From assembly GCF_030144855.1 (NCBI RefSeq), contig NC_082710.1:145142001-145206000 (forward strand): DNA of 64,000 bases, read 5' to 3'. Of the stretch, positions 18,805 to 20,979 are shown piece by piece. The notes beneath the pieces were generated by a model. That model saw nothing but the letters and a program-made list of their open reading frames with translations, was not told where the DNA came from and ran no database searches. The first letter of the stretch is position 1; every line of letters starts with the position of its first letter. The stretch is from Hypanus sabinus. Lineage: Eukaryota. Position numbers and translations under genes: made by a program.

Positions 18805-20472
18805 TACTCCAAGTGTGGTCTAACCAGAGTTTTATAAAAATCGCAACATTACCTTGGGATTCTTGAACCTAATCCTGTGACTAATGAAGGCCAACATAAC
18901 ATACATCATCTTAACCACCCTATCAACTTGTGCAACAGCTTAGAGGGACATAAGTTGGAATGTTCTCATTGTGACAGTGTGAGTTGCCTCTGGGTGATCC
19001 TTTTTCCTCTGATATGCTGAAAATGTGAGGGATGTGGTAAGTTACCTCTGAGTGCGTGGAGGGGTGGCAGAATTTATGGGGGTGGGTTTGATACAAATGT
19101 GGGAAGAATAAAAGGCATTAGGGTAGGATTCATGTCAGCTCATCATCGGTCGTGATCAACCATAGATATTGTGTGCCAGCTGTCTATCAGATACAGTACA
19201 ATACAGAAAGCAAGCTGCTGGCCTTGCAGCAGGCATCTCCTCTCCAAACAGCTGATTAATCCAAAGGAACTGTATGGGCCAGTTTGGCACCAGTGGTTAT
19301 CACAAGAGTTGCCAGTGTTGAACTCCATGTAGGACCGCCTTAAGAGCTCCAGCTCCAGCTCCATATTTTTCTCTCAGTGTTTACTCCCAAAGCCTTCCCC
19401 ATGAGTGGGTATAGCAAGGCAGCGGAGGTTTGAGATCAAAGTTTTTCCTCTCCTAGATAAGCGGCCAACTGTGGCTGACCAGCCTCATCTGCTCAAAGCA
19501 ACTGGTTTTAAGGTGCTGCCTTCGCTCCTCCTGTCAGCAGAAACGGTTCTGCCGGGCTTAATAGCTAAGCCATACGTGAGGGCCAGGAGCTGGACTTGAC
19601 TGTCAGAGGCCACCTGAGACACACACCATTGGAACATATCCCCACTAGCTCCCCCCAGCTATGACAACTTTATGGAACCAGGATTTGTCTAGAAATAAGT
19701 GTTAGTGCGGATGCAGTGGTCTGAGGCACTTGATTCCATTTGTGTAACTATGGCTACAAGCGTAACAGTACTATTTGGAAAGCACTTTTAAAAGCCAGTA
19801 ATGCATGGTGACCAAATGATCTTCTCCTGTGGAAAATTATGATGTCATGGAGTAACTTAATTCATCTGAACTATTATTTTAATGTGCTTCAATGCACTTC
19901 GACAACAGTACATTGTACTGAGGGCCAGGAGCAATAGAAGTGGTAGGTGGAAGGATTGTTAGATATTAGACCAAGGCCTCCAGGAATACAAGTTGTCTCA
20001 TGCCATTATTTCAAGAACTGCAAGTTCTCTGAACCCAATACTGATCCCTCACACATTGTCACTGAAACACTGATCATCAGCATCCCCGACATTCTCTCCC
20101 ATCCCCCCCCCAAAAAAAAACCCCCAATAGGATACAAAAGTCTGAGACTTAGATAAAAGCATGGATAAAAGAAAAATGGAGGGCTACGTGGGAAGAAGGG
20201 TTAGATTTGATCTTGGAGTAAGTCAAAAGGTTGGTGCAACACTGTGGGCTGTGTTGTGTTCTTTGAAAGTACATACTACTAGGCCCAAGGGCAGCTTCTA
20301 TCCCAGACTATTGAACAGACCTCCTGTATGATAGGATGAAGTCTTGACTTCACAATCTACCTTGTTATGGCTTTATTGCCTGCCTGCACTTTTCCCTGTA
20401 ACTAAAACACTTTGTTCTGCATTGTTACTGTTTTACCTTAAGACTATAGCTTTTCATCGAGAGCGGGTGACG

Positions 20473-20913
20473 ATGGCGGACCCAGTAGAGCAGAAGAAGA
20501 AAAGGACCTTTAGGAAATTCACCTATCGAGGTGTGGATCTGGACCAGCTCCTTGATATGTCCTATGAACAGTTGATGCAATTGTATTGTGCTCGACAGCG
20601 GAGGCGTGTGAACAGGGGTCTGCGCCGTAAGCAGCAATCCCTCCTGAAGAGGCTGCGCAAGGCCAAAAAGGAAGCTCCGCCTATGGAGAAACCCGAAGTC
20701 GTTAAGACACATCTTCGTGACATGGTTATCCTTCCAGAGATGGTTGGCAGCATGGTTGGTGTATACAATGGCAAAACGTTTAACCAGGTTGAAATCAAGC
20801 CTGAAATGATTGGCCATTACCTTGGAGAGTTCTCCATCACCTACAAACCCGTCAAGCACGGCAGACCCGGTATTGGTGCCACTCACTCCTCCAGATTCAT
20901 CCCTCTGAAGTAG
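20473..20913 (+). pseudogene. RPS15: Processed (intronless) retrocopy of 40S ribosomal protein S15 (uS19), ORF intact, 146 aa
   Basis: [29 protein letters not shown]...[12 protein letters not shown]. No introns; AATAAA 20938-20943; poly(A) 20953-20972; TSD AAGACTATA at 20440-20448 and 20971-20979. Inserted unit ~20449-20970. Confidence 0.95.
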
Positions 20914-20979
20914 TGATTTACTGTGGAAATATGTGTAAATAAAACTCATTCCAAAAAAAAAAAAAAAAAAAAGACTATA

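What the first reader, a model, noticed from the sequence alone, without database searches (positions are those of the whole stretch)
20440..20979. Intact, full-length RPS15 retrocopy antisense in NALCN intron 9, with a cap-derived extra G
Seen: TSD AAGACTATA on both sides; one extra G at 20449 between the left TSD and CTTTTC; 23-nt 5'UTR; uninterrupted 146-aa ORF; AATAAA; pure ~20-A tail. Known: ribosomal-protein mRNAs start with a 5'TOP (C + pyrimidines), and full-length L1-mediated retrocopies often gain an untemplated G copied from the m7G cap. Inference: the copy records the exact TSS and poly(A) site of the parental gene and is very young, possibly polymorphic. It could be expressed (antisense to NALCN) and would confuse RPS15 annotation and read mapping. 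RRRVNRG (L in human, from memory) may be a copy-specific change.
Basis: partly seen in the sequence, partly recalled or inferred. Interest (0 to 1): 0.7.

Follow-up and report, generated by a model that had tools for sequence, protein, structure and literature searches.

The report
Young RPS15 retrocopy in stingray NALCN intron
A spliced, full-length messenger RNA of the ribosomal protein gene RPS15 was recently copied back into an intron of the NALCN ion-channel gene of a stingray by a LINE-type jumping-gene machinery; this is a clean textbook case of a common kind of event, not a new kind of element.

Summary
It comprises a 9-bp target-site duplication (TSD; AAGACTATA, 20440-20448 and 20971-20979), one extra G (20449), a 23-nt 5'UTR starting CTTTTC, an intact 146-aa uS19/RPS15 ORF, AATAAA, and a pure A tail of 18-20.

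The copy is colinear with the four exons of the intron-containing RPS15 genes of skates and sawfish. It starts at their conserved TOP cytosine and ends at their cleavage site.

The same 146-aa protein is encoded by a multi-exon RPS15 gene on another chromosome of the same assembly. The assembly is apparently the Atlantic stingray. So a parent exists, and C38 and V45 are cartilaginous-fish traits, not copy-specific changes.

All differences from the orthologues are synonymous, all conserved CpGs are kept, and the TSDs and tail are perfect. The copy is therefore young, with neutral divergence below about 0.9%.

The extra G is not target-derived, and the base before the TOP C is C in all four orthologues. 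This favours a cap-derived G but does not prove it.

The host gene is NALCN, on the opposite strand. The intron is the eighth counted from the ATG exon.

Read laying failed, so polymorphism, expression and the parent's own nucleotides were not tested.

The scan has noted other L1-type retrocopies in this genome. This one is ordinary: a new member of a known kind.

The parts
20440..20448 (+). Left target-site duplication, AAGACTATA. The nick site reads TT|AAGA on the top strand.
   Evidence: This 9-mer occurs only here and at 20971 in the window. The target matches the L1-endonuclease preference TT|AAAA at 5 of 6 positions. That consensus is recalled from established knowledge, not tested here.
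20449..20449 (+). One extra G between the TSD and the first base of the mRNA copy. It is probably the reverse-transcribed m7G cap.
   Evidence: Searches show the G. It is not part of the target: the right TSD copy is followed by A, and other copies of the flanking repeat read through without a G. It is not at -1 in the four orthologous RPS15 promoters, where that base is C.
20450..20472 (+). The 23-nt 5'UTR, beginning with the 5'TOP tract CTTTTC. Together with ATG it equals parental exon 1.
   Evidence: in skates and sawfish CTTT(T)C also lies exactly 23 nt before ATG, and exon 1 ends right after ATG (ATG|gtgggt).
20473..20913 (+). Intact RPS15/uS19 coding sequence, 146 codons plus TAG. Former exon junctions lie at 20475|20476, 20564|20565 and 20799|20800.
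   Evidence: Searches identify the ORF. The protein is identical to that of the intron-containing genes in seven batoid assemblies.
20914..20952 (+). The 3'UTR, with AATAAA at 20938-20943. It ends at the parental cleavage site (TTCC|A).
   Evidence: the orthologous genes continue ...AATAAAACTCATTCC-AGTACA..., whereas the copy switches to A(n) at that point.
20953..20970 (+). Uninterrupted poly(A) tail. It is 18 A, or 20 if the first two A of the TSD are counted.
20971..20979 (+). Right target-site duplication, AAGACTATA. It lies at the 5' end of an older interspersed repeat.
26226..26441 (-). Open frame holding the upstream NALCN exon (residues about 314-349).
   Evidence: E 5e-14 to human NALCN chains.
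15957..16145 (-). Open frame holding the downstream NALCN exon (residues about 350-378).
   Evidence: E 7e-13 to human NALCN chains.

Best explanation
A mature, capped and polyadenylated RPS15 mRNA was reverse-transcribed at a nick in the genome by the endonuclease/reverse transcriptase of an L1-type LINE (target-primed reverse transcription). The DNA copy was fixed into the NALCN intron, on the strand opposite to NALCN.

Shown:
- All three introns are gone.
- The copy starts at the conserved TOP cytosine and stops at the conserved cleavage site, followed by a pure A tail.
- It is bracketed by a perfect 9-bp duplication of a TT|AAGA target.
- A multi-exon parent with the identical protein lies on another chromosome of the same assembly.

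Inferred:
- The enzyme was an L1-clade LINE.
- The single extra G is the copy of the m7G cap.
- The insertion is recent, with neutral divergence under about 0.9%.
- Lacking the parental promoter, it is most likely a silent or weakly expressed processed pseudogene whose frame is intact only because it is young.
For: Anatomy:
- All sequence features sit at the stated coordinates.
- The copy is colinear with exons 1-4 of the RPS15 genes in L001-L004, whose introns have GT-AG boundaries.
- The start at CTTTTC, 23 nt before ATG, matches the orthologues. Their conserved upstream ccggaagtg promoter sequence is absent from the copy's flank.
- The 3' end coincides with the orthologous cleavage site.

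Parent:
- The exact 146-aa protein is encoded by a 4.2-kb multi-exon gene next to a connexin on a 90.8-Mb contig of the same assembly.
- The same protein is also encoded by the 441-nt intronless gene inside a 1779-aa Ion_trans gene on the 187-Mb contig, which is this window.

Youth:
- 17 CDS differences to sawfish and 36-43 to skates are all synonymous.
- All 11 copy-only sites are third codon positions.
- 7 of 7 conserved CpGs are kept.
- With 341 nonsynonymous sites, zero amino-acid changes bound neutral divergence at 0.9%.
- Public runs hold 0.73-0.88 of the copy's 31-mers, which corresponds to about 2-4 isolated differences in 504 nt.

Extra G:
- It is not in the target, and -1 is C in four orthologues.

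Frequency:
- Retrocopies are common and mostly species-specific in cartilaginous fishes (bioRxiv 10.64898/2026.06.26.734816).
Against: - The parent's nucleotide sequence and promoter in this species could not be read, because the sample file was too large. So copy-versus-parent differences and the -1 base are inferred from relatives.
- No L1-clade element was identified in the window. The reverse-transcriptase fragments near the copy hit only the generic RVT_1 family.
- An intact frame with zero amino-acid changes is also what a selected retrogene would show.
- No reads were laid. Assembly support, zygosity and expression are therefore unknown.
- The species of the runs is coded. Their k-mer shares are only a rough guide.
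Confidence: 0.85

Rival explanations
1. The copy is a functional retrogene: a second, expressed uS19 gene kept intact by purifying selection rather than by youth.
For: The ORF is 100% identical in protein to the parent, and its start context is unchanged. It is called as a gene in the public annotation. Another elasmobranch, Hemiscyllium ocellatum, also carries an intronless 146-aa RPS15-like gene with an open frame despite 8% amino-acid change.
Against: The perfect TSDs, pure A tail and retained CpGs show there has been too little time for selection to be visible. The copy carries no parental promoter. It sits antisense deep in an intron, among degraded repeats. Most ribosomal-protein retrocopies are dead on arrival; this last point is established knowledge, not tested here.
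Confidence: 0.07
2. The extra G is not cap-derived. One possibility is that the stingray parent starts transcription one base upstream at a genomic G. Another is that the TSD was 10 bp (AAGACTATAA) and its last base mutated A>G in the left copy. A third is that G is a random filler base added at the 5' junction.
For: The parent promoter of this species was not read. Left and right repeats do align over 10 positions with one mismatch, G against A. Filler bases at LINE 5' junctions are known; this is established knowledge, not tested here.
Against: The -1 base is C in skates and sawfish, which fits the pyrimidine-rich TCT-type initiator of ribosomal-protein genes. A point mutation at exactly that base is improbable in an insert with a neutral divergence bound under 0.9%. 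G is the specific base expected from the cap.
Confidence: 0.25
3. It is an assembly artefact: cDNA or transcript-derived sequence wrongly built into the genome assembly.
For: No public run in the index holds more than 0.51 of the words of 20050-21350. Independent read support for the junctions was therefore not seen.
Against: An artefact would not create a perfect 9-bp duplication of the target at an endonuclease-type site, nor place the insert precisely inside a repeat that otherwise reads through. The assembly's own reads appear simply not to be in the index.
Confidence: 0.02

Closest known systems
L1-mediated processed pseudogenes of ribosomal-protein genes in mammals
   Same: Intronless. 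Runs full-length from the TOP start to the poly(A) site. Has a poly(A) tail, a 9-bp TSD and a TT|AAAA-like target, and carries no promoter.
   Different: The host is a batoid (stingray), whose LINE content around this locus is not visibly L1. The responsible element was not identified here. The copy is unusually pristine, with no amino-acid change.
Untemplated 5' guanosine of full-length L1 and SVA insertions, read as the reverse-transcribed m7G cap (PMC4859970; PMC4038843)
   Same: A single G sits exactly between the TSD and the first transcribed base of a full-length insertion.
   Different: Here it is on a cellular mRNA copy in a cartilaginous fish. The parental -1 base was checked only in related species.
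Retrocopies of cartilaginous fishes catalogued across Vertebrate Genomes Project assemblies (bioRxiv 10.64898/2026.06.26.734816)
   Same: Belongs to the numerous, mostly species-specific retrocopies reported for this lineage (14,081 copies, 95.7% species-specific).
   Different: Only 15.7% of those keep an ORF, and this one does. That paper reports that ribosomal-protein genes are not among the top parental genes in this lineage.
Intronless RPS15-like gene of Hemiscyllium ocellatum (P0043)
   Same: A 441-nt single-exon gene encoding a 146-aa uS19-like protein in another elasmobranch.
   Different: That copy is 92% identical to this ORF and carries many replacements, so it is older. Its DNA could not be fetched, so its ends are unknown.

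Membership tests
Processed (LINE-mediated) retrocopy | All parental introns precisely absent | tested here: met
   The copy is colinear with exons 1-4 of L001-L004. Three GT-AG introns of 0.6-9.6 kb are missing.
Processed (LINE-mediated) retrocopy | Intron-containing parent elsewhere in the same genome | tested here: met
   The exact protein is encoded by a 4.2-kb multi-exon gene on a 90.8-Mb contig of the same assembly. Its DNA could not be read.
Processed (LINE-mediated) retrocopy | Poly(A) tail at the parental cleavage site, downstream of AATAAA | tested here: met
   AATAAA lies at 20938, and A18-20 begins where the orthologous genomic sequence continues AGTACA.
Processed (LINE-mediated) retrocopy | Target-site duplication flanking the insert | tested here: met
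   A perfect 9-bp repeat, found only at the two ends within 64 kb. The flanking repeat family reads through the reconstructed empty site.
Processed (LINE-mediated) retrocopy | No parental promoter carried along | tested here: met
   The conserved ccggaagtg promoter block upstream of the TOP start in the orthologues is absent from the copy's 5' flank.
L1-clade machinery specifically | Endonuclease target resembling TT|AAAA | tested here: met
   The target reads CCTT|AAGACT, a 5 of 6 match. The consensus itself is from established knowledge.
L1-clade machinery specifically | An active L1-clade LINE in this genome at the time of insertion | not tested
   The reverse-transcriptase fragments in the window give only generic RVT_1 or zf-RVT hits, and there was no PDB match. 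Notes from other windows mention L1 and Tx1-like elements but are unchecked.
Cap-derived untemplated G | G absent from the pre-integration target | tested here: met
   The right TSD copy is followed by A, and paralogous repeat copies have A at that position.
Cap-derived untemplated G | G absent from the parental gene at position -1 | tested here: inconclusive
   The -1 base is C in three skates and a sawfish. The parent in this species was not readable.
Functional retrogene | Transcription of the copy itself | not testable with these tools
Functional retrogene | Purifying selection on the copy's own branch | tested here: inconclusive
   There are zero replacements, but the copy is too young for this to discriminate.

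The most novel reading that the evidence does not exclude
The insertion is so recent that it still segregates in Atlantic stingray populations as a retrocopy-number variant. That would show that a LINE able to mobilise cellular mRNAs is active in the germ line of a living batoid. The copy would also preserve, base for base, the cap site and poly(A) site of a TOP mRNA.
Probability: 0.3. Interest if true: 0.4.

Novelty: new member of a known kind. Interest (0 to 1): 0.25.

Why it matters
Practically, the copy encodes a protein identical to real RPS15 and is already called as a gene. It will therefore attract RPS15 RNA-seq and proteomic assignments and inflate gene counts.

Biologically, it is a clean marker that poly(A)-dependent, L1-type retrotransposition worked recently in a stingray lineage. 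It also gives an independent record of the RPS15 transcription start (the TOP C) and cleavage site. None of this is unexpected.

Tried and rejected
- **Read laying.** So there are no read-level data on junctions, empty alleles, parent-versus-copy differences or RNA 5' ends.
- **Parent DNA.** The same applied to the Hemiscyllium copy.
- **Transcript contigs.** I looked for transcript contigs through exact look-ups of N-terminally extended ORFs (window:20452-, 20455- and 20467-20910). All three were blank.
- **Sequencing-run searches.** The second search found no run holding more than 0.51 of 20050-21350. The first attempts at both run searches were unanswered.
- **Identifying the LINE.** An attempt to classify the LINE fragments in the window as L1-clade gave only generic or no hits.
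- **Rejected readings.** DNA-level duplication is rejected because no introns are present. A copy-specific V45 or C38 is rejected because both residues are lineage traits.

Full report
**1. Observation**

The stretch reads exactly as described.
- AAGACTATA lies at 20440-20448 and again at 20971-20979. These are the only two occurrences in the 64-kb window.
- A lone G sits at 20449, followed by CTTTTC at 20450.
- ATG is at 20473, giving a 23-nt leader. The frame is open for 146 codons, to TAG at 20911-20913.
- AATAAA is at 20938-20943.
- An uninterrupted A run spans 20953-20972. Its last two bases double as the start of the right repeat, so the tail is 18-20 A.
- It is the only A or T run of 12 or more in the window.
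- The protein is uS19/RPS15: Pfam Ribosomal_S19 at E 2e-37, and about 1e-91 to vertebrate 40S S15 chains.

**2. What it is**

An exact-sequence look-up of the 146-aa protein found it on eight chromosome-size contigs of seven batoid assemblies.
- Seven places are multi-exon genes of 4-14 kb, several of them lying next to a connexin gene.
- The eighth is a 441-nt single-exon gene. It lies inside a 1779-aa Ion_trans gene on the opposite strand, on a 187-Mb contig of GCA_030144855.1. This is the window's locus.
- The same assembly also carries a multi-exon gene, on a 90.8-Mb contig. So an intron-containing parent with an identical product exists in this genome.
- Earlier, unchecked notes of this scan call the genome the Atlantic stingray and place RPS15 beside a 198-residue connexin. 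This agrees.

Four orthologous loci could be read: L001-L003 and L004. From memory of the accession numbers these are skates and a sawfish, which I did not check.
- The copy is colinear with their four exons.
- The former junctions fall at window 20475|20476, 20564|20565 and 20799|20800.
- The missing introns are 0.6-9.6 kb long with GT-AG ends.
- Exon 1 of the orthologues is 23 nt of leader plus ATG, followed by gtgggt. The leader begins CTTT(T)C in all of them. The copy therefore starts at the conserved TOP cytosine.
- At the 3' end the orthologous genes read AATAAAACTCATTCC-AGTACA. The copy turns into A(n) at that exact point.
- The conserved promoter block ccggaagtg just upstream of the start is not present in the copy's flank.

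**3. The insertion site**

The right flank is an older interspersed repeat that begins at the TSD.
- Other copies in the window (about 49811 and about 29122) read straight through the equivalent of AAGACTATA-AAACAC without a G.
- The reconstructed empty site is therefore ...CCTT|AAGACTATA|AAACAC...
- The nick site TT|AAGA matches the L1-endonuclease preference TT|AAAA at 5 of 6 positions. That consensus is established knowledge, not tested here.
- I could not identify an L1-clade element in the window. The reverse-transcriptase fragments at 16.7-17.3 kb and 22.3-23.1 kb give only generic RVT_1 hits, and an ORF of the Tx1-like stack has no solved relative.
- 'L1-type' therefore rests on the insertion hallmarks.

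**4. Age**

- The copy differs from the sawfish CDS at 17 sites and from the skate CDSs at 36-43 sites. Every difference is synonymous.
- The 11 sites where the copy differs from all four orthologues are all third codon positions.
- All seven CpGs conserved in the orthologues are intact.
- The copy's CDS therefore looks like a selected orthologue, not a decaying pseudogene. Nearly all of these changes must predate the insertion.
- With 341 nonsynonymous sites, zero replacements bound neutral post-insertion divergence at about 0.9% (95%). Adding the 18 TSD bases and the 18 tail bases tightens this to 0.8%.
- Public runs of several coded organisms hold 0.73-0.88 of the sampled 31-mers of the 504-nt copy. 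This corresponds to roughly 2-4 isolated differences. Species and library type are coded or guessed, so this is only a rough guide.

**5. The extra G**

- It is not target sequence.
- In all four orthologous promoters the base before the TOP C is C. This fits a pyrimidine initiator and makes a genomic G in the stingray parent unlikely, but not excluded.
[quoted passage not shown] The same was seen on other capped RNAs (PMC4038843).
- I put the cap reading at about 0.7. The alternatives are a templated G, a mutated 10th TSD base, or a filler base.

**6.

- V45 (RRRVNRG) and C38 are not copy-specific. They are in the intron-containing genes of all batoids found and in Callorhinchus RPS15.
- NALCN is confirmed. 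Minus-strand frames at 26226-26441 and 15957-16145 match residues 314-349 and 350-378 of human NALCN.
- By eye, frames with NALCN-like sequence run from an ATG exon at about 58.1 kb downwards. The copy lies in the eighth intron from that exon. 'Intron 9' requires an untranslated first exon.
- Polymorphism, expression and long-read support could not be tested. I kept those places out of every later search.

**7. Comparison and novelty**

- This is the standard anatomy of an L1-mediated ribosomal-protein processed pseudogene, here in a stingray.
- A survey of Vertebrate Genomes Project assemblies reports 14,081 retrocopies in cartilaginous fishes, 95.7% of them species-specific and 15.7% with an ORF (bioRxiv 10.64898/2026.06.26.734816).
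- This scan has noted several other L1-type retrocopies in the same genome (unchecked).
- Hemiscyllium ocellatum has its own, older, intronless RPS15-like gene.
- The finding is real and tidy but ordinary. It is a new member of a known kind, with practical relevance for annotation and read mapping.

Noticed in passing
window 15957-58201, minus strand: The first nine coding exons of NALCN lie in the window. By eye, frames with NALCN-like sequence sit near 58.1 kb (the ATG exon), 55.0, 47.0, 46.8, 45.3, 40.0, 27.3, 26.3 and 16.0 kb. Only the last two were checked against solved NALCN chains.
   Followed up: partly
window 20971-21200, with relatives at 49811-49854, 29122-29361 and 12930-13103: The retrocopy landed 9 bp inside the 5' end of an interspersed repeat family beginning (C)ATAAGAC...GGAGCAGAATTAGGCC. 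Several diverged copies (66-84% identity) are in the window. The family was not identified.
   Followed up: partly
window 16697-17319 and 22350-23130, minus strand: Degraded LINE reverse-transcriptase fragments (Pfam RVT_1) flank the retrocopy on both sides within the same NALCN intron. Their clade was not determined.
   Followed up: partly
L001-L004, about 5950-5977: The RPS15 promoters of skates and sawfish share a conserved ccggaagtgag block (ETS-like, from memory) 10-15 nt upstream of the TOP start. Exon 1 ends immediately after ATG in all of them.
   Followed up: no
P0043 (Hemiscyllium ocellatum, GCA_020745735.1): A separate intronless 441-nt gene encodes a 146-aa RPS15-like protein that is 92% identical to this ORF. 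Its frame is open despite many replacements, so it may be an older retrocopy or a retained retrogene in a shark.
   Followed up: partly
By its own message this is a filter that also trips by chance. They were left out of all later searches, and nothing is claimed about them.
   Followed up: no
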